Part shown: one piece after another, positions 4,368-61,667 of the stretch | Layout of the letters: each line of letters begins with the position of its first letter | How positions within the stretch are numbered: position 1 is the stretch's first letter | Virus record (IMG/VR): IMGVR_UViG_3300005253_001115 | Location: 186,001 to 250,000 of that record | DNA: 64,000 nucleotides | Direction: 5' to 3' (one strand) | The notes under the pieces: generated by a model | Told to the model about the DNA's origin: nothing | Database searches by the model: none | Seen by the model: only the letters and a program-made list of their open reading frames with translations | Program-made: the position numbers and the translations under genes

Positions 4368-4687
4368 GCGACTATCCTGCTACTCCCGAGCTAGACAAGA
4401 TACGGGCGCATCGAGACACGTCCCAGGCGATAGGGTCATTCATTGACTGGCTCGCCACCGAGGCCCGATTTGGACCGCAGAGCGGAGAAGGTCGTAAAGC
4501 GGCAATACGCGCGCAAAAGCTCAACAACTCGCCCGTAAAGCTGTGCTTGTTTGATGAGCACTGGAATGAGTGGAGGCCGGTTGCCCTCAGGATAGAGGAA
4601 ATGCTGGCCCGGTACTTTGAGATTGACCTCAACAAGGTTGAAGAGGAGCGTAGAGCCCTCTTGGAGCACATACGAGAAGAAGGTTAG
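4364..4687 (+). CDS. hypothetical protein
   Basis: ATGA overlap with the upstream stop; contains GRKAAIRAQK motif. Confidence 0.7.
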   Translation: MSDYPATPELDKIRAHRDTSQAIGSFIDWLATEARFGPQSGEGRKAAIRAQKLNNSPVKLCLFDEHWNEWRPVALRIEEMLARYFEIDLNKVEEERRALLEHIREEG

Positions 4688-4790
4688 AATAAAGACAAAG
4701 GGCTAAAGATTCGGCCTGCCAGGCCGAAGAGTAGAATATGCCTCACAGATGGGTGAGGCAGACTGAAGCGTAAGAAAAGGAATCAATCAA

Positions 4791-6008
4791 ATGGGAAAGT
4801 CCTATTTCGTAGAACTGGGTATCATTGGGTGGGAGCATATCGAACCTATCATTCTCGGTGCGATACTCTGTAACAAGTCGGTACTCCTCAACGGCATGCA
4901 CGGTTCCAATAAGACGGAAGGCTGCGCGCTAATCAGCGAAGCGGTCTTCGGCGAGGGAACTAAGTTCGTACCCTACGATACGTCTCTCGTCAATGCTGAC
5001 GATCTGCTCGGGTTCCTGAACCCGGCGTGTCTTCAGGCTGGAGAGATCGAGTACATTTCCACTCCTGACTCGATCTGGGATGCTACGTCCTGTCTTCTCG
5101 ATGAAATCAACCGATGTAACCCCTACAATGCTGCGAAGTTCTTCGAAATCGTCCGTGCTCGCACGATCAACGGTCGCCCGACTGACCTTCAGTTCGTGTG
5201 GGCGGCTTGTAATCCCCCGGACAAGTACAACACTGCGCACATGGACCCTGCCCAGGTGTCCCGATTCGTGGTGCTGAACGTTCCGACCTACGGTGAACTC
5301 TCGAACTCTGACCAAAAGAGGATCATGAATCTTGGGGAGCATGGGGCGGCTGGTTCGCTCAAGCCTTTGCTCGATCAGGCTAGAGCAGCAAGCATCCCCG
5401 CTGGACAGGCCAAGGCGATCGAGGCGAAGGTCACCAAGCTCGCCGAGACCATGAACAAGTCTGGTATCCAGTTCTCCGGTCGTCAGGTTCGGGATCTGCA
5501 CAACATATTCTCGAACATGGATCGCATTTCTCAGGTCTTCGATGGTCTGGAAATCAATGAACAGATTCTCTGTACTGCGGTCATGGGTCTGATTCCCGAG
5601 ACTACAGGATTGATTCGAACTACGATCGACAGGATGAAGGTCGAGGCGGAAATCGCTACGGTCCTCCACGGGTTCAAGCTGAGCGATCCGGTTCTGACTG
5701 CCGCCAACGTGGCTGAACTCTGCAAGGCTAAGATCAGGGATGGTGCAGGACTCGCCGCTGCCATCGCAGACATGCTCCATACTGAGGACGACCCGAAGAT
5801 GATCGAAAAGGCATGGCAGAACATCACGGCGCGACAGGATATTCAGCCTGACGTGTTCAAAACTCTGCGGCAGACGTTTGCAGCGCGGGTAGCTCTAATC
5901 AAGCTTCCCAAGGATGCCAAGATCGAAGACGCTGCGGCGGCGGTCAAGGTAGAACTCAACAACTACGGTCCCAAAGCTGCCCGCTCGGGACGAAAGAAGA
6001 AGGCATAG
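4791..6008 (+). CDS. MoxR-type AAA+ ATPase
   Basis: Walker A variant GMHGSNKT, Walker B LLDEINR, sensor AACNP, MDPAQVSRF arginine finger. Confidence 0.85.
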   Translation: MGKSYFVELGIIGWEHIEPIILGAILCNKSVLLNGMHGSNKTEGCALISEAVFGEGTKFVPYDTSLVNADDLLGFLNPACLQAGEIEYISTPDSIWDATSCLLDEINRCNPYNAAKFFEIVRARTINGRPTDLQFVWAACNPPDKYNTAHMDPAQVSRFVVLNVPTYGELSNSDQKRIMNLGEHGAAGSLKPLLDQARAASIPAGQAKAIEAKVTKLAETMNKSGIQFSGRQVRDLHNIFSNMDRISQVFDGLEINEQILCTAVMGLIPETTGLIRTTIDRMKVEAEIATVLHGFKLSDPVLTAANVAELCKAKIRDGAGLAAAIADMLHTEDDPKMIEKAWQNITARQDIQPDVFKTLRQTFAARVALIKLPKDAKIEDAAAAVKVELNNYGPKAARSGRKKKA

Positions 6009-6017
6009 GAGAAAGAG

Positions 6018-6608
6018 ATGACTACCGGAAAACGACTGAAGGAACAGTGGCACAAGGGTACTGATAAGTACGAGGAGGGAAAGACACTCACAGATATCTT
6101 CGCCCATGAGGTGGAGAACCCGAAGATGGCATGGTACGTCGATTACTACACCGAAGACCCGGGACGTTACCGGGTGCGCTATCTGGCAGTGTCGCCCCGG
6201 AACACGATTTTCATGACTAATGAAAACAAGGACGAGCGCGATCCGGCGGATCTTGAATCATCACAGTGGGGCGGCGCGGACGTTGCCGAGTGGTTCTCTC
6301 CCGATGGCTCGAATGTCGAGCATCGTTGGGTGTTCCTCTTCCAGCATGCCTCAGGTGAGGTGTACGGGATTCACTGCGAGGCGAACCGGGTGTTTGCCTT
6401 CGGCCCGGCGAGCCTGTCTCTCCCGATGGTGAACCTCTGGGAAGAGTATGTAGAGCATGGCATCCTCGGCCCGGTACAGGCTTGCTCCAAGATCTCTGAG
6501 TCGAAGCTCTTCGGCATCATTGAGGACCCGAACGTACAGGGTCAGTTGGTGAAGGCGGGGCTGCTACAGGAGTACCTGGGCGCTCTCGCGGCGCTTCTGG
6601 ACGAGTAG
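6018..6608 (+). CDS. hypothetical protein
   Basis: 196-aa ORF between the ATPase and vWA genes; AGGAG SD. Confidence 0.7.
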   Translation: MTTGKRLKEQWHKGTDKYEEGKTLTDIFAHEVENPKMAWYVDYYTEDPGRYRVRYLAVSPRNTIFMTNENKDERDPADLESSQWGGADVAEWFSPDGSNVEHRWVFLFQHASGEVYGIHCEANRVFAFGPASLSLPMVNLWEEYVEHGILGPVQACSKISESKLFGIIEDPNVQGQLVKAGLLQEYLGALAALLDE

Positions 6609-6728
6609 GGCACGGGGGCAGGGTCCATCTCTCCCTGTCCCCGAGGGGCCTCCAGGTAGTTGTGATTCCTCTGCCGGGAGGCCCCACTTTTCACTAAAGT
6701 AATCCGACGGGAGACCGAAGAGTAAAGT

Positions 6729-8825
6729 ATGGCTACAGACTACCTCACGGGGATCAAAACGAAGATCGAGCGGGGCGACCTCAAAGGTGCCGAGCGTGAT
6801 CTTCATCTCCTCATCACCACTAAGGACTTCATGAGGGTCTGGGGTCGTAATGACCTTCCCGTCCTCTGGGGACATATTTCCCACATTACGCTGGACGAGT
6901 CAATTGGTACTGCAAGCGTGAACCTTTATACCGGCAGGCTCATGATCGCTCCCTCTCTTCTTCTGAAGACGGTCCACTCGATCCATGATCTCCTGTTCAT
7001 CATTATGCACGAGCGCGACCATCGTCTGCTCCGGCGCATTTACCGGGTGGACTGGTTCCGCCTACGTAAGCTCCTCGACTACAATGAAGACTGGTTCGAC
7101 AAGGTGTCGGGAGTGGTTGAGGATGCCTGGATCAATGCTAGCGTGCGGTCTTCGATGGGCATCAAGTCTGGCTTTCCCGAGCAGTTCTATTGCTGGACTC
7201 AGGCAGACATTGACAATCCAGGAAAACCCACTCCCGAGAACCCAAGAACTTCTGGCTTCGATCCAGCTAAGAGGCACAAGCTCGGCGACCCCCGGTCCCC
7301 GGAGTTCGCGCTTTTTACCTGCCTTTCTCCCTTCGTCCATGACGACATTCAGAAAGGGCACGAGGGTTTGTACTCGGACACTGACGAACTGCTGAAGGAG
7401 CACGGTCTTACTCCGGTCTCGCACCGAACCAGCAATCCTCGTCGCCGCCATCACCGATACGACTACGGGCGATACGGTACCATGCTCTCGTTCCCAGAGT
7501 GGTACACTGTATTCTGTGATTGGCTGGAGATACACAAGGACGACCTTGCTCGGCCTGCCCCCGGTACCGAGCACGAGGAAGATTGCCCACAGCACCCAGA
7601 TAACAGCGAAGACGAAGGCGAGGGCGAAGGCGAGGGCGAAGGCGAGGGTGAAGGCGAGGGTGAAGGCGAGGGTGAAGGCGAGGGTGAAGGCGAGGGTGAA
7701 GGCGAAGGCGAGGGTGAAGGCGAGGGTGAAGGCGAGGGTGAAGGCGAGGGTGAAGGCGAGGGTGAAGGCGAGGGTGAAGGCTCTGGTTCGGGTGATGACG
7801 CCGATAAGAACGACCCCGCAAAAGGTCACGGACACGGCGGACGAAAGCCTTGCACCTGCAACGGTGGTAACGGCCTGCTCGACGAGCCGATGACTTTGAA
7901 GGAGCGCCTTGCCCGGATACCGGGTCTCATCAAGTCGATTGATGAAATCATGAACAAAGCTCTCGATAAGGACATTCGGCGGGATGCCGGGGACAAGGAC
8001 CCAAACGGCAAGGATCAGCCCATCGAGGTTATGGAAATGTCTGGTCCCAAGGGTGTTAGTTGGGGCGGCAAGGTCCACGGTACAGAGATCGTTCCTAAAG
8101 AGATAGAGGATCTTGACGACTTCGATCGTGGGCTCCTCGAAATGGGTGGCTCGACACTGACCGATTCCCATAAGACTGATACGGTACAAATCAAGGGTGC
8201 GGTAAAGCGCTACGCTGACGATCTGGTACAAAACATCGCTACCATGCGAGTAACGGACCACAGGATTATTCGACCGGATTTCAACATCCCCGCGCGACCG
8301 TCGCGGCGGGATATAATGAGCCTCGGTATGGGTTACATGCCGCCGATGTGGGACCACAACCAGTACCTTGAGCAGAACGAATTGATCGTTTACACGGATG
8401 TATCGGGCTCGATGAGTAACTGGTACTCGGTTGCCCTGTACCTAACGAAGCAACTGCGAGAGTTCGGCTGCACTGCCTACCAGTTTTCGACGGTGATTTG
8501 CCAGCCTGTTCCGGGTCGCGACGACAACATTTTCTGGGGTACGGGCGGGACGCACTTCAATGCAGTCGCCGCCCACATTAAGGCAAAGGGCTTCAAGTCG
8601 GTTATCATCATTACCGACAACTGCGACAACCTGTCTCCTGACTGGCACGAGTTTCTGAGGGATGAGGTTCCCGAGCTATACCTTGTGTTCCTTGAGGATG
8701 GTAATCGACCCCCAAACCTCGATGAGCAGAAGTACGGTTGGGGTGGTGGAAGTCGCGCTCGCGGTTTCTTTGGCACCTCTGAGAACATCACGGGTATTTT
8801 CGACTCGGATGTGGGGAAGAAGTAA
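6729..8825 (+). CDS. metallopeptidase-like plus vWA domain protein (MoxR partner)
   Basis: HExxH (HERDH) followed by an ED-x-x-IN motif; C-terminal MIDAS DVSGS, GGT, IIITD; central (GE)n linker. Confidence 0.82.
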   Translation: MATDYLTGIKTKIERGDLKGAERDLHLLITTKDFMRVWGRNDLPVLWGHISHITLDESIGTASVNLYTGRLMIAPSLLLKTVHSIHDLLFIIMHERDHRLLRRIYRVDWFRLRKLLDYNEDWFDKVSGVVEDAWINASVRSSMGIKSGFPEQFYCWTQADIDNPGKPTPENPRTSGFDPAKRHKLGDPRSPEFALFTCLSPFVHDDIQKGHEGLYSDTDELLKEHGLTPVSHRTSNPRRRHHRYDYGRYGTMLSFPEWYTVFCDWLEIHKDDLARPAPGTEHEEDCPQHPDNSEDEGEGEGEGEGEGEGEGEGEGEGEGEGEGEGEGEGEGEGEGEGEGEGEGEGEGEGEGSGSGDDADKNDPAKGHGHGGRKPCTCNGGNGLLDEPMTLKERLARIPGLIKSIDEIMNKALDKDIRRDAGDKDPNGKDQPIEVMEMSGPKGVSWGGKVHGTEIVPKEIEDLDDFDRGLLEMGGSTLTDSHKTDTVQIKGAVKRYADDLVQNIATMRVTDHRIIRPDFNIPARPSRRDIMSLGMGYMPPMWDHNQYLEQNELIVYTDVSGSMSNWYSVALYLTKQLREFGCTAYQFSTVICQPVPGRDDNIFWGTGGTHFNAVAAHIKAKGFKSVIIITDNCDNLSPDWHEFLRDEVPELYLVFLEDGNRPPNLDEQKYGWGGGSRARGFFGTSENITGIFDSDVGKK
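7614..7781 (+). repeat. in-frame microsatellite (GAAGGCGAGGGT)n encoding poly-(Glu-Gly)
   Basis: About 168 nt of 6/12-nt tandem repeat, directly visible. Confidence 0.97.
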
Positions 8826-8827
8826 TT

Positions 8828-9181
8828 GTGACGATCTCGGTGTACACGATAGGTTGGTGCGCGTTGGCGCTGTCGTTGGTTTACCTGTGGTACTGTAACT
8901 TCGGCGTCAATATTCGTAGCAGGGTTTCAAAACGGTTCACAAAAAGTGTGCCGTTACAGTTCGCCGTCGTGTACGACCAGTTCGGGGAGGTTGTTCCGGT
9001 TTGCGGGTATATTCGTCCCGGTGAGTGGCAATGCAACTGCAAGGCGAAGCCGTGTTGTAGCGTCCTTGTACGCATACGAGCAAAGGCGAAGGCGGATGCC
9101 CAGCAGCACGACAAGCCGGAGATCACCGACCGCCGTGGGTTGATTGCCGCCCAGAAAGCAAGGAAACGGAATGGAAGTTAA
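8828..9181 (+). CDS. membrane-anchored hypothetical protein
   Basis: N-terminal hydrophobic helix, Cys cluster, C-terminal RRGLIAAQKARK. Confidence 0.65.
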   Translation: MTISVYTIGWCALALSLVYLWYCNFGVNIRSRVSKRFTKSVPLQFAVVYDQFGEVVPVCGYIRPGEWQCNCKAKPCCSVLVRIRAKAKADAQQHDKPEITDRRGLIAAQKARKRNGS

Positions 9182-9398
9182 GGCAGGCTGCTATTACAGG
9201 CGAGAAGACGGACCGATCGTTAAAGTCCTTCACGGAAACGTGACCCCTTTCTGCGGGCACAAAAATCATCGGTCTGTAGTATACAGGTACCGGGAAGGCG
9301 AGTGGCCTACCCCGTCTGAATACATGTCTTACGACCTGTTCGTAGAGATGCACGAAGGCCCACTAGGTTGGGACGAAGCACTGAAGGAGTTTAAGTGA
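9171..9398 (+). CDS. hypothetical protein
   Basis: Likely start MEVKAG at 9171, downstream of AAGGA. Confidence 0.55.
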   Translation: MEVKAGCYYRREDGPIVKVLHGNVTPFCGHKNHRSVVYRYREGEWPTPSEYMSYDLFVEMHEGPLGWDEALKEFK

Positions 9399-9592: not shown

Positions 9593-9608
9593 AGTGGAGA
9601 ACACGAGA

Positions 9609-10580: not shown

Positions 10581-11693
10581 ATGCACCACGATTATTCGTG
10601 TGCCGTCATTATCGGACGGTTCCAACCCTTCCATAGTACCCACCAAGCATTGGTCGAGCAGGCCCTCAGGATCGCCGACAAGGTTCTGATCCTCGTGGGC
10701 AGCTCCCACGCAGCTCGCACTCCCAAGAACCCGTTTACGTTCGAAGAACGGCGTCAGATGATCTTCGACTCGATGGGCGTCGATATCCCTGGCCTGCCCA
10801 GCGGACGCATCTTTGTCGAGCCCATCCGGGACTTCTTCTACAGCGACGAAGTGTGGTTGTCCCAGGTGCAGTCCGTCACATCGGAGTACATCGAGGACGG
10901 CGAGACCGTGGCACTTTTGGGAGGATACAGGGATTCGTCCTCGTATTACCTGAATCTATTCCCGCAGTGGGAGTATGTGGCTCCTACGACGCTATCAAAG
11001 ATGGACGCGACACAGGTCAGGGAAGTGCTATTCGATGTGACCCTCGGGCGTACTTGGGGAGACCGGGCCTCTGAGGGGGTTCCTACCATCACGGAAGAGG
11101 ACACCTTCTCGCACACGAAACATTTCAACGAAATGGTTCCCCATACTACGATGCTGTTTCTGGAGAGTTTCCGCACTACCCAGGCATACGGCAGGCTGGT
11201 GGAAGAGTTCCACGCTAACAGGGCCTACAGGGACGCCTGGGAGTCGGCCCCATTTCCTCCGGTCTTCGTTACTGCTGACGCCGTTGTTACTTGCTCCGGC
11301 CACGTTCTCGTGGTCAAGCGAGGAGGCAATCCGGGTAAGGGGCTACTGGCCCTCCCAGGCGGCTTTGTAAGATCGAACGAAAGGATCAAAGATGCTGCCC
11401 TTAGGGAACTGAAGGAAGAAACCCGCATCAAGGTGGATAAACTAATCTTGAAGTCCAACATTGTTACCAGTGCCGTGTTTGATTACCCTGGCCGTAGTTT
11501 GCGTGGTAGAACCGTTACACATGCGTTTCATGTAAGGCTACGAGATGGAAAATTGCCGGAAGTGAAAGGGTCGGACGATGCCGTAGGAGCTTTTTGGCTG
11601 CCCCTTGCCGAAGTATTCAAAAGAGAGGAAGAATTCTTTGAAGACCACTTGACAATTATCCAAAAAATGATCGGAGGGGGGCTTTATGGCTAG
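10581..11693 (+). CDS. nadM: bifunctional NMN adenylyltransferase / ADP-ribose pyrophosphatase (NadM-Nudix, NatV-like)
   Basis: [34 protein letters not shown], Nudix box [27 protein letters not shown]. Confidence 0.95.
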
Positions 11694-12243
11694 TGTTGTC
11701 AAAAAGAAACCATGGGTCAAAAGAATACCTGAAGACATGGTTGGCAGGCGTTTCAAAAATCTTACAGTAATGTGTTTTTCTCGTAGATTGAAAAACAGAA
11801 GGATGTGGAAATGTTCATGTGTATGCGGGGGAGAAAAAGAAGTAGCCACTAGCGATTTGAACAGCGGACATGTAAAATCTTGCGGGTGTCTTGGTAGAGT
11901 AAACGCCTTAGCTTATGGAGAATCCTCTTTCAACAAGCTATTCGGGGCGTACAGACACCAAGCAAAAACACGCGGTCTGGGATTTAGCCTTTCCAAGAAA
12001 CATTTTAGAGAACTGGTAACTAATAGTTGCCACTACTGTGGCATACCACCAAGTAATAGCGTTAAAAAGAAAGGATCTAACGGAGAATTCGTCTATAGCG
12101 GTATTGACCGAGTAGCTACCAAGTACGGTTATTCCGTAAAAAATTGCGTCCCTTGTTGCAAAACTTGCAACTGGGCGAAGGGTACCATGAACCTAGAAGA
12201 GTTCAAATCATGGATAACACGGATCGCAGCACATAACTCGTAG
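11686..12243 (+). CDS. HNH-family homing endonuclease
   Basis: WKCSCVCG...SCGC N-terminal domain, CHYCG, GIDRV...GY...NCVPCCKTCNWAK; AT-rich relative to flanks. Confidence 0.85.
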   Translation: MASVVKKKPWVKRIPEDMVGRRFKNLTVMCFSRRLKNRRMWKCSCVCGGEKEVATSDLNSGHVKSCGCLGRVNALAYGESSFNKLFGAYRHQAKTRGLGFSLSKKHFRELVTNSCHYCGIPPSNSVKKKGSNGEFVYSGIDRVATKYGYSVKNCVPCCKTCNWAKGTMNLEEFKSWITRIAAHNS

Positions 12244-12274
12244 GACCGCAGAAGCCGGTCTGAAAGGAAACACA

Positions 12275-13726
12275 ATGATTACTGGAATGCTTGAAGACAA
12301 TTTCATCCTGGCGGCTGACTCATACAAGGTCGGCCACATCAACCACCTCCCGATAGGGACTCGCAAGACCCACACCTCCATGGTGCCACGGAAGCCCTTC
12401 GTGGACGAGGAACACGGTATCTTGATTGACGAAATCGTCGTTCTCGGTCCCCAGGTCGTCGCTGCGGTCCTCCAGTCTGTAGTCATCACCGATGCGATGA
12501 TTGACGAGGCCGAAATCGAAATCACGGAACAGGGTTACGACTTCCCCCGAGCACAATGGGAATACCTTCGTGACCTTGGGTACCTGCCTCTCGACGTGCG
12601 GGCGATGCCGGAAGGCACTATCGTACAGCCCGGTATCCCGATCATGACGATCGAGAACACGGACGACCGCTCCGCGTGGCTCCCCGCCTACGTCGAGACG
12701 TGGACCCAGGATATCGTGTGGTGTCTTTCGACTATTGCCTCCAAGGTTCGCTGGCTTCGTAATCAGGTGGATATCTTCAACGAGAACACCGGCTGCGACT
12801 ACGAGAACGGCGAGTACATGATCCACAACTTTGGGGATCGTGGGGCTGGTGGACGAGACGGGGCCATCATGGCTGGCATCGCTCACGCCGTGTTCTTCAG
12901 TGGGTCCGACTGCCTTTCGGCTAACCGTTACATCAAGCGGATCTACAACATGGACGGCCCGGTGCTGTCCTCGGTGGATGCCAACGAACACTCGACGGTA
13001 TGTGCCAACTCTGACTGCGATAACAAGGACGACTCGGCAGCGTTCGAGATGACCCTCGCGAATCTGGAGAAGGTGGTAGAGCGCGCCAACCGGGGCATCG
13101 GGGTTCCGGTCCAGTCATGCTTGATCGACACTTTCGATGACGAGCGGTACATCAAGGAGTTCGTGATTCCGAACATCAAGCGGATCAGAGAAAGCGGCGG
13201 CAAGTACGTATGCCGCCCGGACTCGGGAAACGCCATCACGAAGCCTATCGAGGTATGCCAGTGGCTTCTCGATGGATTCGGTCCCGGTCGGCTACTAAAT
13301 TGCAGGGAGTTCGAGATGCTTCCCGAGTACCTTGGAGTCATCCAAGGTGACGGGCTGAAGCTGTGGGACTTCACTACCATCTTCCGGCTTGCCGAGAAGA
13401 ACAAGCTGGCGGCTAGCAACTTCGTCTTCGGCTTCGGTGGTGGCCTGACCAATGGCTCCGGTCGGGACGACTTCAGCTTCTCGATGAAGGCCACAGCCCG
13501 CCAGAACGCTGCCGGTGTATGGGAAGCCATGCACAAGCAACCCAAGACGGACCCGGGCAAGAACTCGCTCCGGGGCCGGGTCGGGGTAATCTCCAAGGGT
13601 GGACAGTTCGTCGTATCAGAATACGAATACGGTGAGTATCATCAGGAAATGGTCTCCATCTATTTCGACGGCGGTCTGCTCTACACCCGGGCCTTCGATG
13701 AGGTCCGAGAAGCAGCGAGGATGTAG
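12275..13726 (+). CDS. nadV: nicotinamide phosphoribosyltransferase
   Basis: DSYKVGH, PEGT, HNFGDRG, ANEHS, CRPDSG, VIQGDG, FGFGGGL, RDDFSFSMKAT, KQPKTDPGKNS. Confidence 0.93.
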   Translation: MITGMLEDNFILAADSYKVGHINHLPIGTRKTHTSMVPRKPFVDEEHGILIDEIVVLGPQVVAAVLQSVVITDAMIDEAEIEITEQGYDFPRAQWEYLRDLGYLPLDVRAMPEGTIVQPGIPIMTIENTDDRSAWLPAYVETWTQDIVWCLSTIASKVRWLRNQVDIFNENTGCDYENGEYMIHNFGDRGAGGRDGAIMAGIAHAVFFSGSDCLSANRYIKRIYNMDGPVLSSVDANEHSTVCANSDCDNKDDSAAFEMTLANLEKVVERANRGIGVPVQSCLIDTFDDERYIKEFVIPNIKRIRESGGKYVCRPDSGNAITKPIEVCQWLLDGFGPGRLLNCREFEMLPEYLGVIQGDGLKLWDFTTIFRLAEKNKLAASNFVFGFGGGLTNGSGRDDFSFSMKATARQNAAGVWEAMHKQPKTDPGKNSLRGRVGVISKGGQFVVSEYEYGEYHQEMVSIYFDGGLLYTRAFDEVREAARM

Positions 13727-45804: not shown

Positions 45805-46830
45805 CTAGGAAAGGAGCTTTTCAATCCTCTCTTCCGTTCGTTCGCGCTTCCCGCTCTTTCCCGACGTGATGTCAGGGATCAACCCATCCAGCTTGAAGCC
45901 GTGCTTGTTGAGCTTCGCCGCGAAAATCTTCGTGGACCGGACGCTCAGGCACTTTTTGCCAGCGACGTGCCACATCATCAGCAGCCCGATGAAAGCCGTC
46001 TTTTTGAGAGGGATGGCACCAGAGTTCTTGTCCACATTGGCGCAAACACCCTCGATCCACTGCATCGCAGCAATGATCTTCTGGCGATTGGCGGGGGAAA
46101 GGCCAACAGGGGAGACGGTAGCGGACTCGCCTGCCTGCGGACCCACCTGACTACGCAAAGGAAACACATCTGAATAGTTGCCGGATACGGGAACGCTTCC
46201 CCTGGTCGCCAGGTACTCGATGATGTAAGCAAGCTGGATGGTCTCCGTCTTTCCTACTTGGGCGATGCCCGCCCTGATCGCCATGTCTAGGATGATATCC
46301 CCGTAGCGAAGAAGGGGATTGGAGGTCTTCTCACCCGTGTTGTGCGACCGGTTGGTATTGAGGATCGAGTAGACTTGCTGGAACTCCGTAGCAGGAACAA
46401 TGGAAAGCGAAACAACAGTCCGCAGGTCGGAGGCCGACAACACACCTGCCTCGTAGGCTGCCATCAGCCCGCCAATGGTTCGATTGTGTCCATCAGCCAG
46501 CTTGATGTAAGGCTTTCCCTGCTCGTCCTTGAACACGGCCCCTGTGATTTGTCCGAAGGCTGCCGCACAGAAGTCCGAGACCATCTTTTTGATGAGCCTG
46601 GGACTGAATTGGTCTCCAGTCCCTCGATTGAACTCGAACGGCTTGATGCGCCTGTGAATGATGTTCTGGATCAGAGCGTCCAGAGTAAACACCCAAAGGT
46701 TTTTGGAGCCACCTTCTTTGATAGAAGCCGCTTTGGCGAAGCCAGGAGTGAGGGGAAAATCGTGCAGACAGTCGAACCCTTTGATGGCTTTCGCAGCCGC
46801 TTCTACGTCAATGTAGGTCTTACCACTCAT
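45805..46830 (-). CDS. ParB/Srx-like (DGQHR-type) domain protein
   Basis: FNR motif, then LADGHNR, then LN motif typical of DUF262/DGQHR-type ParB-fold proteins. Confidence 0.6.
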   Translation of the reverse strand: MSGKTYIDVEAAAKAIKGFDCLHDFPLTPGFAKAASIKEGGSKNLWVFTLDALIQNIIHRRIKPFEFNRGTGDQFSPRLIKKMVSDFCAAAFGQITGAVFKDEQGKPYIKLADGHNRTIGGLMAAYEAGVLSASDLRTVVSLSIVPATEFQQVYSILNTNRSHNTGEKTSNPLLRYGDIILDMAIRAGIAQVGKTETIQLAYIIEYLATRGSVPVSGNYSDVFPLRSQVGPQAGESATVSPVGLSPANRQKIIAAMQWIEGVCANVDKNSGAIPLKKTAFIGLLMMWHVAGKKCLSVRSTKIFAAKLNKHGFKLDGLIPDITSGKSGKRERTEERIEKLLS

Positions 46831-47585
46831 CCTTGTTCTCCTTCGGCTTTCAGCCTATTTTCAGCAATTTCAAAAAAACTCTCGTCCATCTCGAAACCCA
46901 GTCCAACCCTGTTGGTTCTCTGGGCTGCCAGAAGCGTCGTACCCGATCCTGCGAATGGATCGAGCACTGTAGCACCTTCTTGGGTCATCCACAAGAGGAA
47001 TTGTTTAGCGAGCGCCACCGGTTTCTGTGTGGGGTGTCCGCACTTCTCCTTGCTTCCCAGAGTAAACACCCAATCTTCAATCTCCGATATTCTCTTGCGC
47101 TCTACTAACTCACCTTTCCTCTTCACATCTATGGGGTTGAGAGAAGGCTTGCCTTTGGCAAGGTAGATAATTGGTTCCCAGTCCCGCTTCGCGGCACCTT
47201 TCAAATCACCGCCGATAGCGAACCGCTTGTTCCAGGCGATTGTTCCTTTGTACGTGAACCCCGACCGTTTTATGTTCTCCCAACGCTGTCCCAAGAAGGG
47301 CGGATTAGCGTGCAGCACGCAATAACTGTCGTCTTTCAACACCCTGAAGCACTCTGAGAAGAAGTCGTCCCAGGCAATAGCGGCGTTCTCTTCCGGTTCG
47401 TCCCCCGCGATGGGTTTTGAGAAACGGCTCTTAGATTCGCCGGATTTGTTCCAATTTTTCGATCCGGGTATATTTGAAACGTACCCAAGGCCATACGGTG
47501 GGTCCGTCAATACCAGATCCACAGACCCCTCTGTCACCTTCGGCAACAGGTCTTCCCACCTACCCCAGTGCATTCCGTTTAGCAT
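46827..47585 (-). CDS. beta-class N4-C/N6-A DNA methyltransferase
   Basis: VDLVLTDPPY, IAWNK, HPTQKP, VLDPFAGSGTT. Confidence 0.92.
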   Translation of the reverse strand: MLNGMHWGRWEDLLPKVTEGSVDLVLTDPPYGLGYVSNIPGSKNWNKSGESKSRFSKPIAGDEPEENAAIAWDDFFSECFRVLKDDSYCVLHANPPFLGQRWENIKRSGFTYKGTIAWNKRFAIGGDLKGAAKRDWEPIIYLAKGKPSLNPIDVKRKGELVERKRISEIEDWVFTLGSKEKCGHPTQKPVALAKQFLLWMTQEGATVLDPFAGSGTTLLAAQRTNRVGLGFEMDESFFEIAENRLKAEGEQG

Positions 47586-47598: not shown

Positions 47599-48318
47599 CT
47601 ACCACTCTACAAGAGTGCCGAGGGATGTTTTTGCTTCTTCAAGAATCTTCTCCGCTTCCTCCAAAGAAGTAAAAGTGCCAAGAGAAAGGACAACCCGGTA
47701 CTGGTCTTCGAGCCCAGCCACCCGTTTTTTTCCTTTGTGGCTAAGGGGTTTTGTGGTAGCTTTTTGCCTGTAAATCCCCGGAGGTAAATCTCTGTTAAGG
47801 GTTGTGCGCCTGTTGAGTGTTTGTTGCCTATGTGTTGCCCACCGCAAATTACCGGGTTCATAGTTTCCGTCGTTGTTAATTCGATCAAGAGAGTGCTCTT
47901 CGGGGCGTGGTCCCAGGTTTTCCTCCAGCCACCGTATAAACGCGCCTGCGTCGTCTATCCACGGCTCATACATCTTAATGCCACGAGCACTGTAGTAGGC
48001 ATGATACTTGCGACTTTTTCCACCACATCTTTCTTTAATGGAACACCACAGAGAGTACATAGGATTCTTTCCTCCTACTGGACTATATCCGTGCTTCTGT
48101 CTGTGCATATTTGCGCCGCAACTTTTGGTTACACCACTCACACAATTGCCCAAATATACAATTTTCTCGACACCGCATTCACATATAGTGGCGACCTGAC
48201 GACCGTTCTTTATTGTGGGAAACACCTCGTGTAGTACGGTCAGGGTTCCATAGACATTCCCCACCACATCCTTAGGCAAGGAACTACGTCGGCGCTTCCA
48301 GTTTTCTCCTCGGGGCAT
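47599..48318 (-). CDS. HNH homing endonuclease with AP2-like C-terminus
   Basis: CECG...SCG, Y..RGI, SLDRINNDGNYEPGNLRWAT, LGTFTSLEEA; start probably MPRGEN. Confidence 0.85.
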   Translation of the reverse strand: MPRGENWKRRRSSLPKDVVGNVYGTLTVLHEVFPTIKNGRQVATICECGVEKIVYLGNCVSGVTKSCGANMHRQKHGYSPVGGKNPMYSLWCSIKERCGGKSRKYHAYYSARGIKMYEPWIDDAGAFIRWLEENLGPRPEEHSLDRINNDGNYEPGNLRWATHRQQTLNRRTTLNRDLPPGIYRQKATTKPLSHKGKKRVAGLEDQYRVVLSLGTFTSLEEAEKILEEAKTSLGTLVEW

Positions 48319-48335
48319 GTAAATTCCTAGTTCGC

Positions 48336-48761
48336 CTATATCTTCGCCACCTTCGCACATTTGTCGCACTTCTGCCTATGGATTTTGGCGTACCCAAATA
48401 GCTCATGGCTACAGTCAGTACCTGTGCAGAACACTCGGTGCTCGCCAGCGTTGGGCGTAATGGCAAACAGGTCTCCGGGTCCAGCCTCCGAGGGTTTCAC
48501 CTTCGTGAACCACCCATCGGCGTTCAAGTCTGCCAGGAACCGGGAGAGCTTGCCTCGCGTGGACAGATGCCCGCCCCCGCTCTTGAAGCCAGAAATGCGC
48601 TCGTAATCGCCTTTCTTCAACTTCTCAATCCAGATGTAAACAAAAGTCCGCTCGCCGTTCATGTCCGTGATCCAAAGGCTATCGGGATTGATCCCGAACT
48701 CCTTGGCAATGAAGTCAGTCCATTTGTGAGTGAACTCTTTTGCTTTCTTTGTAACGGGCAT
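48336..48761 (-). CDS. hypothetical protein with C-terminal zinc finger
   Basis: C...C...CDKC; start probably MPVTKK. Confidence 0.55.
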   Translation of the reverse strand: MPVTKKAKEFTHKWTDFIAKEFGINPDSLWITDMNGERTFVYIWIEKLKKGDYERISGFKSGGGHLSTRGKLSRFLADLNADGWFTKVKPSEAGPGDLFAITPNAGEHRVFCTGTDCSHELFGYAKIHRQKCDKCAKVAKI

Positions 48762-49715: not shown

Positions 49716-49967
49716 CTACGAAGGGTTTGTGTATCTCTCCACGAGGAGAGGCGCGGCATCAAGGATCGACATGATATCCTTCTTGCCAACCCCCGTTGCG
49801 TCGTGCAACAGTAGCACAATCGCTCGTCTTTTCAAGCCAGATTCGTTGATCTGGTCGAAGCCGTCTGCCACTTTGTGGAGGCTGGAGACTATGATGCTGA
49901 GCGGCTCCTCAGTATCGTTATCGACCGTAACATGGGAGTTCTTGAGTTCTTTCTTAGGTCTGGGCAT
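49716..49967 (-). CDS. hypothetical protein
   Basis: 83-aa coupled ORF. Confidence 0.6.
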   Translation of the reverse strand: MPRPKKELKNSHVTVDNDTEEPLSIIVSSLHKVADGFDQINESGLKRRAIVLLLHDATGVGKKDIMSILDAAPLLVERYTNPS

Positions 49968-50229
49968 TCTTCCTCGCTTTCTGCGCCTCTATTGCTGCTC
50001 GTCTACCTGTAGATGCGGCGTTCTTGGGCGTGGCCTCTGCAAGATCGCTGGGCCAGTGTTTCGGGTTGTCCGTCCAGTCATTGCCATCTTGATGCAAGAA
50101 GACACCCCACATCTTACCTTCATGCTCTGTCTTAGCAAAACAGTCCAGCCCTTGACTGTGCCCTTTGGGTCGGATACATCCCAGACCCAGACTGGGATAG
50201 CCCATGCTGCACAGTTCACCGCCCGGCAT
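49954..50229 (-). CDS. hypothetical protein with GRRAAIEAQKARK tail
   Basis: Probable start MPGGEL at 50229. Confidence 0.55.
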   Translation of the reverse strand: MPGGELCSMGYPSLGLGCIRPKGHSQGLDCFAKTEHEGKMWGVFLHQDGNDWTDNPKHWPSDLAEATPKNAASTGRRAAIEAQKARKNAQT

Positions 50230-50398
50230 TTTTCCTCGCTTTCTGCGCCGCGATTGCTGCTCGTCTGCCTGTCGGCTCGACCTTAGGTAGCTCGGTCTTC
50301 GCCTTGGGCATGGTACTGATAGCCTCAGCACACAGATTAAACGCCCAGATGGCGTAGTCCCCAGGATACGATACGTCTTCATTCTTTTTATACGGCAT
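50216..50398 (-). CDS. hypothetical protein with GRRAAIAAQKARK tail
   Basis: 60-aa coupled ORF. Confidence 0.55.
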   Translation of the reverse strand: MPYKKNEDVSYPGDYAIWAFNLCAEAISTMPKAKTELPKVEPTGRRAAIAAQKARKNAGR

Positions 50399-50573
50399 TT
50401 TTCCACCACTCCTTGTCTATCTTCTCAAGCTCCGGCCCGAGTTTACTAGGAAAGACCACGGCGTAGCCCTCATCGTCGTTGATCTCGATGTGGTCGTGGT
50501 TGGTAGTGAGACGTGCAACTGCCTTGTAGAAAGCGCGCAACTTATCTAGTTCGGCTGCTTCTTTCTCAGTCAT
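50388..50573 (-). CDS. hypothetical protein
   Basis: Small ORF in a minus-strand run. Confidence 0.5.
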   Translation of the reverse strand: MTEKEAAELDKLRAFYKAVARLTTNHDHIEINDDEGYAVVFPSKLGPELEKIDKEWWKNAV

Positions 50574-52938: not shown

Positions 52939-52954
52939 GCTGCCTCGCTCCCTA

Positions 52955-55557: not shown

Positions 55558-55578
55558 CTAATGAGGGCATCGGATTCC

Positions 55579-56678: not shown

Positions 56679-56736
56679 TTTGTTTCTCACATGCTTATGT
56701 TTAGGAGGGAGTATTACTAAAGAAAGGATCATCTTT

Positions 56737-57540: not shown

Positions 57541-57546
57541 AAATTC

Positions 57547-57980: not shown

Positions 57981-57989
57981 TTCGTTAGA

Positions 57990-58814: not shown

Positions 58815-58829
58815 TTTCTAATCCTTGTA

Positions 58830-59152
58830 GGAGCGGCACGGAATGCTCCAAACGGGTTACACTGCATCTATGTCCGTGCCGCTCCGTAATATAGGGCGGT
58901 TGGTCAATGAGATTTCGGGTTACAAATGGGAGTTGGACCAACCATCCTGTAAAGTTGGGGCGACGCCGCACAGCGGATTCGGGTTGCATGAGCGCATCGA
59001 CAGCGTAGCCCCTTTGTAAGTTATGAGCGGCGCGACACTCTCCCAAAGGGTTGCATCACGGCGGTGGTCGCGCCGCTCTGTTATATTGAGTATTTTAGTG
59101 AGGTTGGTCACTCTTCTAGAGGGTTACACCGGTCTTTTGGACCAGCCTCACT
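58830..59152 (-). ncRNA. TIGR-like stem-loop guide array B (5 units)
   Basis: Same architecture; cores at 58842, 58905, 58969, 59036, 59109. Confidence 0.88.
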
Positions 59153-59157
59153 GTGAT

Positions 59158-59739
59158 TTACATGTAAGTCCTCTCGCGTAGTCTCTCGACAAACTCATCC
59201 TGAACGACTGAGCCTACCGTGCGCTTGTCTCCGGCGGAGACGCCTTCGGCCTGCATCTTGTCTGCAATGGCGAAGAGCATCCGTGCGTCACGTCCGAAGG
59301 TGCCAGACTTCTTGTCTCGCATCTGCGCCTCGGTGGTCACCTGATCGAACGTAGCAGAGCGCAACTTCACGCCCCCGTGGGTCAGGTAGAATGTGTCCAT
59401 GTAGAGCGCAGCGACGGTCTCAGCACTTGCTGCGTCGGCTGCTGCTGTTCTCTTGGACTTGTTTGGCTTGGCGGCTCCGGTTGAGGGTGCCTGGGGCGTG
59501 ATAGGCAGAACCCGAGACTGCGACCGAAGTCGCTGCACGATGTTGTTGATCTGACTGTTGGCGAAGCGCTTCCAGACTTCCGTCTCGATAGCAGACGCCA
59601 TCGCAGGGCTCAGATTATCAATCTCAGCATCAGCGACAGCAAGAAAGGCAGCTTTCGCCTTCTCCCAATCTCCGCTGCTTGCTGTCCACGCTGTCTCAGC
59701 CCACTTGGCAAAGACCTCTTCTATGTCTACGGAACTCAT
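59158..59739 (-). CDS. unknown protein embedded between guide arrays
   Basis: 193-aa ORF with AAGGA SD, co-oriented with the TasA-like gene. Confidence 0.75.
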   Translation of the reverse strand: MSSVDIEEVFAKWAETAWTASSGDWEKAKAAFLAVADAEIDNLSPAMASAIETEVWKRFANSQINNIVQRLRSQSRVLPITPQAPSTGAAKPNKSKRTAAADAASAETVAALYMDTFYLTHGGVKLRSATFDQVTTEAQMRDKKSGTFGRDARMLFAIADKMQAEGVSAGDKRTVGSVVQDEFVERLRERTYM

Positions 59740-59787
59740 ACGTTTTCCTTCTTTATCCCCGTGGCAAAATCGCCCGGTGGAAATGTA

Positions 59788-59903
59788 GCGGTCCTGACAC
59801 CTTGAAAGTGGGTTACAAGTTCTTTATGGTCAGGACCGCCGTTGAAGTATAGCAGGTCGGTCAGTGGCGACAAGGGTTACAAACACAGAAAGGACCGACA
59901 CTG
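59788..59903 (-). ncRNA. TIGR-like stem-loop guide array C (2 units)
   Basis: Cores at 59798 and 59862 with inverted-repeat stems. Confidence 0.85.
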
Positions 59904-59931
59904 AATCCAATGAATAGGTAGCTTTCGAACA

Positions 59932-60387
59932 TCAGCTTTCAACCTCTTTCTTCTCCAAGTAGAAGAAATCCAGACCCTCAGGTTCTTTCTCTCCTCGAAA
60001 GATGAGAGCAGCAGCCCCCATGCAAATATTGTCACCTAGGATCTTCTGTACCTTGGCAACCGCTTGCCCAGAAGACACCACATCGTCCACGATAAGGTAC
60101 TTCTTTTTGCTGAACCCAGGGCCGCGCGTGCGGTTCTCCAGGGTTAGCACCTTCACTCGTGGCTTGTTGAGTATCCCGGCCACCACGAAGGCAAGCTCGA
60201 TGCCGCCGATAATCGGGGTGGCGATAAAGTCTATCTCGTCTCGCAACGTTTCGGGGATCAACTCTGCAAGTTGCTCTGCATACTCTGTCGTAGCTCGGCT
60301 GTCGAGTAGATCGAAGTCGTAGTAATACGGAGAACTCCTACCAGAGGTAAGTTCGTGGTCTTCTTTGATCCGGCATTCCTCGAACAT
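59932..60387 (-). CDS. orotate phosphoribosyltransferase-like type I PRTase
   Basis: LTSGRSSPYYYD, PRPP-binding LIVDDVVSSG. Confidence 0.78.
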   Translation of the reverse strand: MFEECRIKEDHELTSGRSSPYYYDFDLLDSRATTEYAEQLAELIPETLRDEIDFIATPIIGGIELAFVVAGILNKPRVKVLTLENRTRGPGFSKKKYLIVDDVVSSGQAVAKVQKILGDNICMGAAALIFRGEKEPEGLDFFYLEKKEVES

Positions 60388-60399
60388 GCTGCCTACACC

Positions 60400-60720
60400 T
60401 TACGTATTTTCGATCCCTTTCGAGATGACCTTGTAAATTGTGTGTGGAGCATACGTTACCTTAGTTCCATCTGCAAGGGTGTGGGTATACCCTCGACGGA
60501 TGATGGACGAAACCTTGCAATCAACCAGAATCTCGGCTGCTGTTTCCCACCGGTCATTCATGTTGGTCGAGTAAGACAGCGGCAGTTTGAAGACCTGAAG
60601 CGGTCTGGGAATTCCTTGGGCGGTACCTTCGCTCGTGACGAATACCGTCACGAGGTAGTCCGTCTTCGTGAGAGTCGGAGGGCTCAAGATACCGAGCCGA
60701 ACTAGAATATGCCTAAACAT
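60400..60720 (-). CDS. hypothetical protein
   Basis: Likely start MFRHIL, downstream of AAGGAG. Confidence 0.5.
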   Translation of the reverse strand: MFRHILVRLGILSPPTLTKTDYLVTVFVTSEGTAQGIPRPLQVFKLPLSYSTNMNDRWETAAEILVDCKVSSIIRRGYTHTLADGTKVTYAPHTIYKVISKGIENT

Positions 60721-61054
60721 CACTTTCTCCTTTCGTTCCAACGGAACGGATTTGGTTTGACCGTCGGAGCCGCGATCGAATGCTACAAACAAGGGTGATA
60801 ATCGCGTAGGCCAATACGATTAGCGCGAATATCGTTGTTTTCATGCTGGTCTCCTGGGCGAATCGCTAGTCCGAATCACAGCGCAAGCTGGAAGTAACAA
60901 CTACGATGTTGTTACGGGATTCTTCCCGGTCGTAGTCGTCCACATCCCGGTCTCCCGGTGAAAAGTATTTACGCAAGCACTCAGCTTCCGTTCCCTCTGT
61001 GCAAATGATACTTTCGTTTGCACCGCTGTATACTATCAGTCCCATTTTGTCTCC

Positions 61055-61243
61055 TTAGGTGACAGGTGTAGTTTCCTCTTCGGCAGCCAGCCTCATAGCT
61101 TTAGCCTTTTTTTGAGCTTCTATGGCTTGCCTTCGACCGGACTTTTTTAGCTCTGCTGGATAAGCATGGCCATAACAGATGATACGGTTGGGAATTGCCT
61201 CTGCCTTGCACCCCTTGACTTCGCAGGTTTTCCAAATTGCCAT
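61055..61243 (-). CDS. small zinc-finger protein with GRRQAIEAQK motif
   Basis: C....C........C..H. Confidence 0.55.
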   Translation of the reverse strand: MAIWKTCEVKGCKAEAIPNRIICYGHAYPAELKKSGRRQAIEAQKKAKAMRLAAEEETTPVT

Positions 61244-61430
61244 GTCGCTTCTCCAGCGGGTAGATGCCTATTCCATGTCTCCTTCAACTTCAACCAGCTT
61301 TCGGTCTGTGTACTTGCCTCGAACTTTATTTACCTTGTCGGTCGCTTCGGCGATTTCTCTAGCCTCTTCGTCAGACAGGTCGTGATCCAGCACGAGCCTC
61401 TTCGCGGAGAACACAATTCTTTCGAATAGG

Positions 61431-61667
61431 TCAAGGACTTTCATTTTTACGCTCCTTCTGAGCCATTATCGCCTGACGGCGACTGCTCATCCGTGGTTCC
61501 TCCTTAGCCTCCTTGAGAGCGTGCCCGCGATACGCAAGGTCACCGATCCATCCACTCGGGTTGTCTATATAGTGATACTCCCCGCGCAGGGGCTTACTGT
61601 CGTCGGCGACGTACACTGCACCTAACTTGCGCAGTAACAGGTTGCTGTCCTCTAGTTTAGCAGCCAT
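61431..61667 (-). CDS. hypothetical protein with RRQAIMAQKERK tail
   Basis: Probable start MAAKLE at 61667. Confidence 0.5.
   Translation of the reverse strand: MAAKLEDSNLLLRKLGAVYVADDSKPLRGEYHYIDNPSGWIGDLAYRGHALKEAKEEPRMSSRRQAIMAQKERKNESP

What the first reader, a model, noticed from the sequence alone, without database searches (positions are those of the whole stretch)
4484..61500. Short peptide tag GRRxAIxAQKxRK shared by six otherwise unrelated small proteins
Seen: EGRKAAIRAQK (4364 ORF), TDRRGLIAAQKARK (8828), TGRRAAIEAQKARK (49954), TGRRAAIAAQKARK (50216), SGRRQAIEAQKKAK (61055) and SSRRQAIMAQKERK (61431). The motif is mostly C-terminal, spans 57 kb and both strands, and uses varied codons. 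In four cases its 3' end also supplies the SD and ATG of the next gene (e.g. GCGAGGAAGAATG). Inference: a shared targeting, packaging or partner-binding signal, or a small mobile coupling cassette that shuffles ORFans by recombination.
Basis: partly seen in the sequence, partly recalled or inferred. Interest (0 to 1): 0.6.

Follow-up and report, generated by a model that had tools for sequence, protein, structure and literature searches.

The report
Shared C-terminal peptide tag, jumbo phage
An uncultivated 267-kb jumbo phage attaches the same 14-residue basic helix, through a floppy linker, to the end of at least 13 otherwise unrelated small proteins; selection acts on the peptide, not the DNA, so it most likely ties them all to one still-unknown partner.

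Summary
All six sites are confirmed. The whole 266,640-bp phage record holds 13 copies, against about 0.5 expected in six frames and 0.04-0.06 in the proteome. Three related ~260-kb jumbo phages hold none.

Consensus is [E/P]-x-T-[G/D/N]-R-R-x-A-I-x-A-Q-K-A-[R/K]-K, usually followed by 1-5 residues and the stop. Carriers share nothing else, and many are Cys-rich or zinc-finger-like. AlphaFold2 gives a low-confidence linker followed by a helix.

Synonymous sites among the tails are saturated (31% identical codons against 35% expected at random), so the peptide itself is under selection. Among 1.84 billion representative proteins, only 36 match. Thirty-four are small proteins with the match at or near the C-terminus, spread over a dozen or more body families.

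Orthologous bodies occur with and without the tail. One syntenic slot holds alternative tail-ending cassettes.

Best reading: a lineage-specific, modular docking helix for a common cytoplasmic partner, either nucleic acid or a protein hub. The partner is unidentified. The "recombination cassette" idea holds only at one slot. The SD/ATG overlap is real (6 of 13) but secondary. Expression could not be checked.

The parts
4364..4687 (+). Carrier c3 (107 aa). It holds a weaker, internal copy of the motif (EGRKAAIRAQKLNN at 4487-4528), 55 residues before the stop. It may be an old fusion with a downstream ORF.
   Evidence: The C-terminal part matches phrog_21869. The orthologue in G001 keeps the motif (dN/dS 0.06).
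8828..9181 (+). Carrier c4 (117 aa). It has an N-terminal hydrophobic (transmembrane-like) helix, a Cys-rich body, and the tail TDRRGLIAAQKARK at 9125-9166, four residues before the stop.
   Evidence: Family members P0012, P0016, P0023, P0025 and P0033 all keep the TM segment, the CGQIRPGEWQCNC body and the tail.
9171..9398 (+). Downstream gene (75 aa). Its ATG lies 11 nt inside the end of c4, and its SD-like AAGGAAA is formed by the tail's K-A-R-K codons.
49954..50229 (-). Carrier c5 (91 aa) with the tail TGRRAAIEAQKARK at 49969-50010. Relative to L005 it is an inserted cassette (tail 3' part, then body, then tail 5' part).
   Evidence: 90% nucleotide identity to the c6 tail. Orthologues are P0026 and P0039. 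The same c6+c5 tandem occurs on another contig.
50216..50398 (-). Carrier c6 (60 aa): one helix, a flexible linker, then the tail TGRRAAIAAQKARK at 50231-50272.
   Evidence: five orthologues; linker indels; tail invariant except at the x positions. AF2 gives helix 12-29, a low-pLDDT linker at 30-44 and a tail helix at 45-59. dN/dS is 0.17-0.22.
49716..49967 (-). Conserved downstream gene (83 aa, begins MPRPKK...). Its ATG lies 14 nt inside the end of c5. It forms the right-hand flank of the variable cassette slot.
50388..50573 (-). Conserved upstream gene (61 aa, ends ...KEWWKNAV). It forms the left-hand flank of the cassette slot. Its last codons contain the ATG of c6, with the same K-N-A / M-P junction.
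61055..61243 (-). Carrier c7 (62 aa) with a zinc-finger-like body (C..GC...C..H) and the tail SGRRQAIEAQKKAK at 61100-61141, 14-17 residues before the stop.
   Evidence: Family members are P0009, P0017, P0022 and P0035.
61431..61667 (-). Carrier c8 (78 aa) with the tail SSRRQAIMAQKERK at 61446-61487, four residues before the stop.
   Evidence: It is identical to representative P0008.
61268..61444 (-). Downstream gene (58 aa). Its ATG lies 14 nt inside the end of c8, and its SD AAGGAG is formed by the tail's K-E codons.

Best explanation
The motif is a portable C-terminal docking helix. It has a capped N-terminus ([E/P]-x-T-[G/D/N]) followed by R-R-x-A-I-x-A-Q-K-A-[R/K]-K, and it hangs on a flexible Pro/Glu-rich linker behind small, unrelated, often Cys-rich or zinc-binding bodies. 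About two-thirds of the helix surface is invariant and one face varies. I therefore infer that the helix inserts into a groove of one common partner present in the infected cell's cytoplasm. This would tether a whole set of accessory proteins to that partner. The partner is unknown. I split the odds roughly equally between a nucleic acid (an RNA or DNA groove, as with arginine-rich-motif peptides) and an acidic protein hub. Shown: the motif's existence, its non-randomness, peptide-level selection, the helix-plus-linker prediction, the C-terminal placement, modular gain and loss, and restriction to one phage lineage. Inferred: that it binds anything, and what it binds. The tail spreads by recombination that places it behind new bodies. 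Its purine-rich K/R codons are re-used as the ribosome-binding site and start codon of the next gene.
For: There are 13 copies against about 0.5 or fewer expected. PaBG, NCTB and Dickeya phage AD1 hold none. Synonymous sites are saturated while the amino acids are kept. In orthologue pairs the tails accumulate synonymous changes and whole-gene dN/dS is 0.06-0.22. Among 57 distinct tails, R1, R2, A4, I5, A7, Q8 and K9 each carry 3.6-4.3 bits. The most variable positions, x3 and x6, fall at 140-200 degrees of the helical wheel; x10 lies in the same arc but is mostly Ala. AF2 predicts a tail helix after a low-confidence linker in two unrelated carriers, and linker length varies by indels among orthologues. 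The profile search of 1.84e9 representatives gives 36 hits. Thirty-four are 59-162-aa proteins with the match at or near the C-terminus, on a dozen or more body families. Of 62 tails, 53 end within 6 residues of the C-terminus. The c9 family keeps the tail down to about 51% identity. More distant homologues of the c9 body lack it, in virus records with no motif at all. One orthologous body has linker plus tail in G001 and neither in this genome. Membrane-anchored families, whose positive-inside orientation puts the tail in the cytoplasm, argue for a cytoplasmic partner (orientation inferred from sequence).
Against: No partner has been identified, and no binding test was run. No known family, PDB chain or paper matches the peptide. 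A k-mer scan found no recurrent hairpin or site that could serve as a nucleic-acid target (not exhaustive). Both AF2 models have modest confidence (mean pLDDT 68 and 61). The tight distance to the stop codon and the frequent start-codon overlap are also compatible with a role during translation.
Confidence: 0.55

Rival explanations
1. Virion-packaging (capsid-targeting) signal. The basic helix would load the small proteins into the head, perhaps riding on DNA or scaffold, so that they are injected with the genome as a first wave.
For: The architecture of cargo, flexible linker and short conserved terminal peptide is what encapsulin cargo-loading peptides and the T4 capsid-targeting sequence look like (established knowledge). 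The carriers are small accessory proteins in non-structural regions, as injected anti-defence proteins often are.
Against: At least six representative carriers (the c4 type and P0021) begin with a hydrophobic membrane-anchor-like segment, and integral membrane proteins are not expected inside tailed-phage heads. No carrier lies in or next to the head module (portal and terminase are at genome 47.8-52.2 kb; nearest carrier 30.6 kb). No proteomics exists for this uncultivated phage.
Confidence: 0.12
2. Timer or degradation tag. A host or phage AAA+ protease or chaperone would recognise the tail, giving all carriers a common, short lifetime or common handling. Two carriers flank a weak MoxR-like AAA+ ATPase plus vWA protein module.
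For: C-terminal peptide tags are how AAA+ machines such as ClpX pick substrates (established knowledge). Carriers c3 and c4 flank window 4791-6008 (AAA_3, 18 bits, below the cut-off) and 6729-8825 (DxSxS vWA-like motif, (GE)n repeat).
Against: Known C-terminal degrons need defined, mostly non-polar final residues. Here the last 1-5 residues are polar and unconserved. The adjacency involves 2 of 13 carriers and could be chance. Internal copies keep the motif (c3, the carrier at genome 18.7 kb, P0030, P0060).
Confidence: 0.1
3. Nascent-peptide or translational-coupling element. While still in the ribosome exit tunnel, the peptide would slow termination at the nearby stop and so control re-initiation on the overlapping downstream gene.
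For: Of 62 tails, 53 end 0-6 residues before the stop, which places the conserved residues roughly 5-18 residues from the peptidyl-transferase centre at termination. That is a range used by known arrest peptides (established knowledge). Six of 11 C-terminal carriers have the next ATG 8-14 nt inside their end, against 10-13% of gene pairs genome-wide.
Against: Five of 11 C-terminal carriers have no overlapping downstream start, and one is followed by a tRNA gene. The motif is kept when it lies 13-78 residues from the stop. The residues next to the stop are unconserved, unlike in known arrest peptides. The overlap statistic rests on few and partly duplicated cases (c5/c6).
Confidence: 0.08
4. 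A pure recombination patch. The shared sequence would matter only as DNA homology that lets ORFan cassettes be shuffled, and the peptide itself would have no function.
For: At one slot, unrelated bodies are exchanged or added with breakpoints at the tail. The neighbouring c5 and c6 tails are 90% identical in DNA, with an 18-nt exact match.
Against: Across the 13 copies, median nucleotide identity is 55% and the median longest exact match is 6 nt. Codon identity at conserved residues (31%) is no higher than random codon choice (35%). Sequence kept only for DNA homology would conserve nucleotides, not amino acids. A strict back-translated pattern finds no other IMG/VR contig apart from one out-of-frame chance hit.
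Confidence: 0.04

Closest known systems
Encapsulin cargo-loading peptides and bacterial-microcompartment encapsulation peptides
   Same: A short conserved terminal peptide is joined by a poorly conserved flexible linker to otherwise unrelated proteins. It is portable between bodies and directs them all to one destination.
   Different: The consensus is unrelated (basic R-R-x-A-I-x-A-Q-K here). No shell gene is associated. Some carriers look membrane-anchored. The destination is unknown. The comparison rests on established knowledge, not on a sequence match.
Shared C-terminal hub-binding tails of phage replication and transcription proteins (T4 gp43, gp33 and gp55 binding the gp45 clamp; acidic tails of T7 gp2.5 and gp4)
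   Same: Unrelated phage proteins carry the same short C-terminal peptide so that they can dock on one hub protein.
   Different: Those tails are hydrophobic/aromatic or acidic and sit on a few well-known enzymes. This one is basic and Ala-rich, and it sits on 13 or more tiny proteins of unknown function. No clamp or other hub was identified here.
Arginine-rich-motif RNA-binding helices (lambdoid N peptides) and appended basic helices of RNA-binding proteins (N-terminal helix of bS20, Lys-rich helix of eukaryotic class IIb aminoacyl-tRNA synthetases)
   Same: A short basic Ala-rich helix flanked by disordered sequence, with conserved Arg/Gln/Lys on most of its surface. By eye it resembles RRxAIE-like stretches in these peptides (from memory). 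The genome is rich in tRNA biology: 33 tRNA genes and a CCA-adding enzyme.
   Different: The position is C-terminal rather than N-terminal. It has only two arginines plus lysines. The Pfam bS20 model does not match and the PDB profile search does not recover S20. No recurrent hairpin target was found.
PeSL-type mobile regulatory cassettes of T4-type phages (modular shuffling of ORFans)
   Same: At one slot, alternative small ORFs are exchanged between relatives, with breakpoints at a shared sequence that also carries translation-initiation signals for the next gene.
   Different: PeSLs are intergenic promoter/stem-loop DNA repeats conserved at the nucleotide level. Here the shared element is coding, is conserved at the amino-acid level only, and most copies share no usable DNA homology.

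Membership tests
Ribosomal protein bS20 (Pfam PF01649) | A significant match to the S20p profile. | tested here: not met
   Searching PF01649 against the whole phage genome gives no match at E<=10, while 10 control genomes score above the cut-off. The Pfam scan of 9 carriers at E<=1 is empty. The PDB profile search does not list S20 chains.
Lambdoid N-type arginine-rich motif (ARM) peptides | An N-terminal Arg-rich helix that binds a recurrent boxB-like RNA hairpin in the same genome. | tested here: inconclusive
   The position is C-terminal, so that part is not met. The k-mer scan found no recurrent element other than collagen-like and (GE)n coding repeats, but degenerate hairpins were not modelled. 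RNA binding cannot be tested here.
Encapsulin cargo-loading peptide / microcompartment encapsulation peptide | A terminal peptide behind a flexible linker on diverse cargo. | tested here: met
Encapsulin cargo-loading peptide / microcompartment encapsulation peptide | The family consensus peptide and an associated shell protein gene. | tested here: not met
   The consensus here is basic R-R-x-A-I-x-A-Q-K, unlike the Gly/Ser/Leu-rich encapsulin consensus (established knowledge). No shell gene was seen among the annotated neighbours. The phage's own capsid gene was not examined as a possible partner.
T4-type capsid-targeting sequence | An N-terminal peptide removed by the prohead protease. | tested here: not met
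   The motif is C-terminal in 11 of 13 genomic copies and in 53 of 62 collected tails. Cleavage cannot be tested here.
Sliding-clamp-binding C-terminal motifs | A hydrophobic/aromatic consensus (QL[SD]LF-like, or the T4 gp45-binding tail). | tested here: not met
   The consensus has a single Ile and no aromatic residue. The comparison with clamp motifs comes from established knowledge.
PeSL-like mobile DNA cassettes | Nucleotide-level conservation of an intergenic repeat at cassette borders. | tested here: not met
   The element is coding. Median nucleotide identity is 55% and codon identity is at random expectation; only the c5/c6 pair is 90% identical. Breakpoints at the tail are seen at one slot only.
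ClpX C-motif-2 type degron (MuA-like) | Basic residues followed by non-polar residues at the extreme C-terminus. | tested here: not met
   The last 1-5 residues are polar and variable (NAQT, NAGR, RNGS, NESP, ASRS).

The most novel reading that the evidence does not exclude
This jumbo-phage lineage has evolved its own 'address label'. A 14-residue helix recruits a whole repertoire of small zinc-finger-like and membrane-anchored accessory proteins to a single hub in the infected cell. The hub could be a host machine such as the ribosome, RNA or the nucleoid, or a phage-built structure. New effectors would be created simply by recombining new bodies in front of the label. That would amount to a phage-specific short-linear-motif network, with an exon-shuffling-like way of growing it.
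Probability: 0.3. Interest if true: 0.85.

Novelty: new variant of a known kind. Interest (0 to 1): 0.66.

Why it matters
Most genes of jumbo phages are small ORFans with no handle for study. A single peptide shared by 13 or more of them in one genome, and by a dozen or more body families in metagenomes, provides such a handle. One pull-down with an 18-residue peptide could reveal the hub they converge on and assign a common context to many unknown proteins at once. It would also be a clear bacterial-virus example of a short-linear-motif network. It shows how such a network grows: by recombination placing a ready-made tail behind new bodies. If the partner turns out to be RNA or the translation apparatus, it would connect to this phage's unusually large investment in tRNA biology.

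Tried and rejected
1. Chance or a low-complexity basic C-terminus. Rejected: 13 observed against about 0.5 or fewer expected, and none in three related 260-kb phages.

2. A DNA or RNA repeat. Rejected by the codon analysis.

3. Paralogy of the carriers. Rejected: masked BLASTP finds nothing.

4. Known families. Pfam finds nothing for 9 carriers at E<=1. PHROGs matches only body parts of c1 and c3. The PDB profile search gives only chance-level hits.

5. Homology to bS20, a resemblance I recalled from memory. The Pfam S20 model finds nothing.

6. Deposited phages. Megablast and tblastn give no close relative. The terminase is only 31-35% identical to PaBG-like phages.

7. A strict back-translated DNA pattern in IMG/VR. 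It gives one out-of-frame chance hit in a collagen-like gene.

8. A recurrent hairpin or site as a nucleic-acid target. The k-mer scan found only coding repeats.

9. The c9 fold. The AF2 model is of low confidence (pLDDT 61), so no fold search was run on it.

10. Literature. Neither the peptide strings nor general terms found anything relevant.

12. Complex prediction was not used. I have no specific candidate partner, and gene adjacency (the MoxR-like ATPase and vWA protein) is not reason enough.
Full report
WHAT THE WINDOW IS

The window is bases 186001-250000 of a 266,640-bp IMG/VR virus record, estimated 89% complete, with 53% G+C.

The genome encodes:
- a portal, a large terminase, a tail sheath and collagen-like fibres;
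- a DNA polymerase, a UvsX-like recombinase, an SbcC-like nuclease and ribonucleotide reductase;
- an NAD-salvage set;
- a 33-gene tRNA array and a CCA-adding enzyme fusion.

No deposited phage is close. Megablast and a tblastn search with a 1031-aa virion protein find nothing. The terminase is 31-35% identical to PaBG, phage NCTB and the Erwinia/Dickeya AD1 group. This is therefore a divergent, uncultivated jumbo myovirus. IMG/VR holds one closer relative, G001 (184 kb, terminase 91% identical), plus some fragments.

THE OBSERVATION

In the whole genome a regular expression finds nine copies, and a profile built from those finds thirteen. The seven outside the window lie at genome 11.5, 18.7, 21.0, 24.5, 30.6, 161.2 and 260.5 kb.

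Chance would give about 0.5 copies in six frames, based on twenty Markov-2 genomes with a maximum of 2. It would give 0.04-0.06 in the proteome. The same profile finds nothing in PaBG, NCTB or Dickeya phage AD1, each about 260 kb.

Eleven of the thirteen copies lie within 17 residues of the stop, nine of them within 1-5 residues. With the motif masked, the carriers show no similarity to one another. None has a Pfam match.

PEPTIDE OR DNA?

The copies use six Arg codons, four Ala codons, three Ile codons and both Gln and Lys codons. Across all pairs of tails, positions with the same amino acid use the same codon in 31% of cases. Random draws from the genome's codon usage would give 35%. Median nucleotide identity is 55%, and the median longest shared exact string is 6 nt.

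Only the adjacent pair c5/c6 is alike in DNA, at 90% identity with an 18-nt exact run. Selection therefore acts on the amino acids. The copies are old, apart from one recent duplication.

The carriers are real genes. Against orthologues in G001 or in metagenome contigs, dN/dS is 0.06-0.22. Within the tails, synonymous changes are frequent while the core residues stay fixed.

SHAPE

They give the consensus [E/P]-x-T-[G/D/N]-R-R-x-A-I-x-A-Q-K-A-[R/K]-K.
- R1, R2, A4, I5, A7, Q8 and K9 each carry 3.6-4.3 bits.
- The most variable positions, x3 and x6, lie on one arc of a helical wheel (140-200 degrees); x10 falls in that arc too but is mostly Ala. About two-thirds of the surface is therefore conserved.
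- The conserved T and D/N/G before the arginines look like a helix cap. This is an inference.

AlphaFold2 models were made of two unrelated carriers, each with its own orthologue alignment. Both give a low-confidence linker followed by a helix over exactly the motif: c6 residues 45-59 and c9 residues 115-129. The confidences are modest.

Among c6 orthologues the linker changes length by 2-17 residues, while the tail changes only at the x positions.

DISTRIBUTION

I searched a 38-position profile of 17 C-terminal segments against 1.84 billion representative proteins. It gave 36 hits at E<=0.001.

Two hits are long proteins matched in many stretches; I treated them as noise without reading their sequences. 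The other 34 are proteins of 59-162 residues with the match at or near the C-terminus. They fall into a dozen or more unrelated body types:
- a membrane-anchor plus Cys-rich type (like c4);
- several zinc-finger-like types (like c7, and P0040);
- a SWIM-like protein with two tails in tandem (P0030);
- the c5, c6, c1 and 30.6-kb types, and others.

Of 62 tails in all fetched proteins, 53 end within six residues of the C-terminus.

The c9 family keeps the tail in about twenty homologues, down to roughly 51% identity. Its R, A, I and K positions are as conserved as the body core. More distant homologues of the same body (30-37% identity) sit in three other virus records, one of them complete. They lack the tail, and those records hold no motif at all.

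G001 has five carriers:
- three are orthologues of c1, c2 and c3 that keep the motif;
- one has no counterpart here;
- one has an orthologous body that in this genome stops just before the linker and tail.

The tail is thus a module that has been added to, and lost from, independent bodies within one phage lineage.

THE CASSETTE SLOT

Between a conserved upstream gene (window 50388-50573) and a conserved downstream gene (49716-49967), relatives carry four arrangements:
- c6 alone (L005);
- an unrelated body with the same tail (L007);
- c6 plus a member of that second family (L031);
- c6 plus c5 (this genome, and one other contig).

In the three-way alignment, unrelated DNA ends exactly where the tail codons begin. 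The insertion in this genome runs from inside one tail to inside the next. Each cassette's ATG sits in the K-N-A codons of the preceding gene.

Elsewhere the tails are too different in DNA to recombine.

THE SD/ATG OVERLAP

In 6 of 13 carriers the next gene's ATG lies 8-14 nt inside the carrier's end. The tail's K-A/E-R-K codons form an SD-like purine run there. With a home-made gene caller, 36% of same-strand neighbours overlap genome-wide, and 10-13% overlap by 8-14 nt.

Carriers are therefore enriched for this arrangement. However, the numbers are small and c5/c6 are not independent. Carriers with no overlapping neighbour keep the same residues, and one is followed by a tRNA gene. I read the overlap as opportunistic re-use of purine-rich Lys/Arg codons, not as the reason for the motif.

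MECHANISM

The combination of features is that of a short linear docking motif: an unrelated body, a flexible linker, a short capped helix with most of its surface conserved, and a position held near the C-terminus. I commit to that reading at 0.55. The tail ties many small accessory proteins to one partner.

Several carrier families start with a hydrophobic anchor followed by basic residues. This would leave the tail in the cytoplasm (inferred from sequence). That points to a cytoplasmic partner and argues against capsid loading.

The basic, Ala-rich character, the many zinc-finger-like bodies and the genome's heavy tRNA investment lean towards a nucleic-acid target. But no known RNA-binding family matches, and no recurrent target site was seen. 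An acidic protein hub is equally possible.

Carriers c3 and c4 flank a weak MoxR-like AAA+ ATPase and a vWA-like protein with a (GE)n repeat. I record this as a lead only.

The rival explanations, with the tests that would settle them, are listed separately: packaging signal, degradation or handling tag, nascent-peptide control of coupling, and a pure recombination patch.

LIMITS

- The gene map comes from a simple codon-usage caller.
- The host is unknown.
- No binding test was attempted, because there is no specific candidate partner.

NOVELTY

No Pfam or PHROG family, PDB sequence or searchable paper covers the peptide. The general principle of a portable terminal peptide that directs unrelated proteins to one place is well known. 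Examples are encapsulin and microcompartment cargo, and clamp- and polymerase-binding tails of T4 and T7 proteins. This motif, its scale within a phage genome and its mode of spread appear undescribed. I rate it a new variant of a known kind, with interest 0.66.

Noticed in passing
genome 1-24,000 (loci L008, L009), outside the window: An array of 33 tRNA genes on the + strand is interleaved with small ORFs. Five motif carriers lie in or beside it. Next to it is a 1013-aa protein whose N-terminal part is a tRNA nucleotidyltransferase (genome 32092-35133).
   Followed up: partly
window 4791-6008 and 6729-8825: There is a weak MoxR-like AAA+ ATPase (AAA_3, 18 bits, below the cut-off). Nearby is a 698-aa protein with a ~29-unit Gly-Glu repeat and a DxSxS vWA-like motif. 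The pair is flanked by carriers c3 and c4.
   Followed up: partly
window 10581-11693, 12275-13726, 62555-63565: An NAD-salvage set: an NMN adenylyltransferase/Nudix fusion, nicotinamide phosphoribosyltransferase and ribose-phosphate pyrophosphokinase.
   Followed up: no
window 61652-62266 (-), 354-1739 (-): A polynucleotide-kinase-like ATPase whose end overlaps the start of carrier c8, and an ATP-dependent ligase. Together with the CCA-adding enzyme and the tRNA array, this looks like an RNA/tRNA repair kit.
   Followed up: no
window 11686-12243 (+), 47599-48369 (-), 46827-47585 (-): Two HNH endonuclease genes and a DNA methyltransferase lie among the accessory genes.
   Followed up: no
protein P0030 (metagenome, 154 aa): A SWIM-like zinc-finger protein carries two copies of the tail in tandem, followed by about 30 further residues. 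This shows the tail can be duplicated and can be internal.
   Followed up: no
loci L032-L034 (virus records G004-G006): Distant homologues of the c9 body (YHRNGVxG...WRGDHF) exist in other phage lineages without the tail. The body is a conserved phage domain of unknown function with no Pfam or PHROG match.
   Followed up: partly
genome 64-88 kb (loci L011, L012), outside the window: Several large tail-fibre genes contain long collagen-like repeats. These account for nearly all repeated k-mers in the genome.
   Followed up: no
window 3546-4367 (+): A 273-aa protein ending in a zinc-ribbon (Pfam Zn_Ribbon_1) lies directly upstream of carrier c3. Small zinc-binding modules are unusually common in this region.
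   Followed up: no
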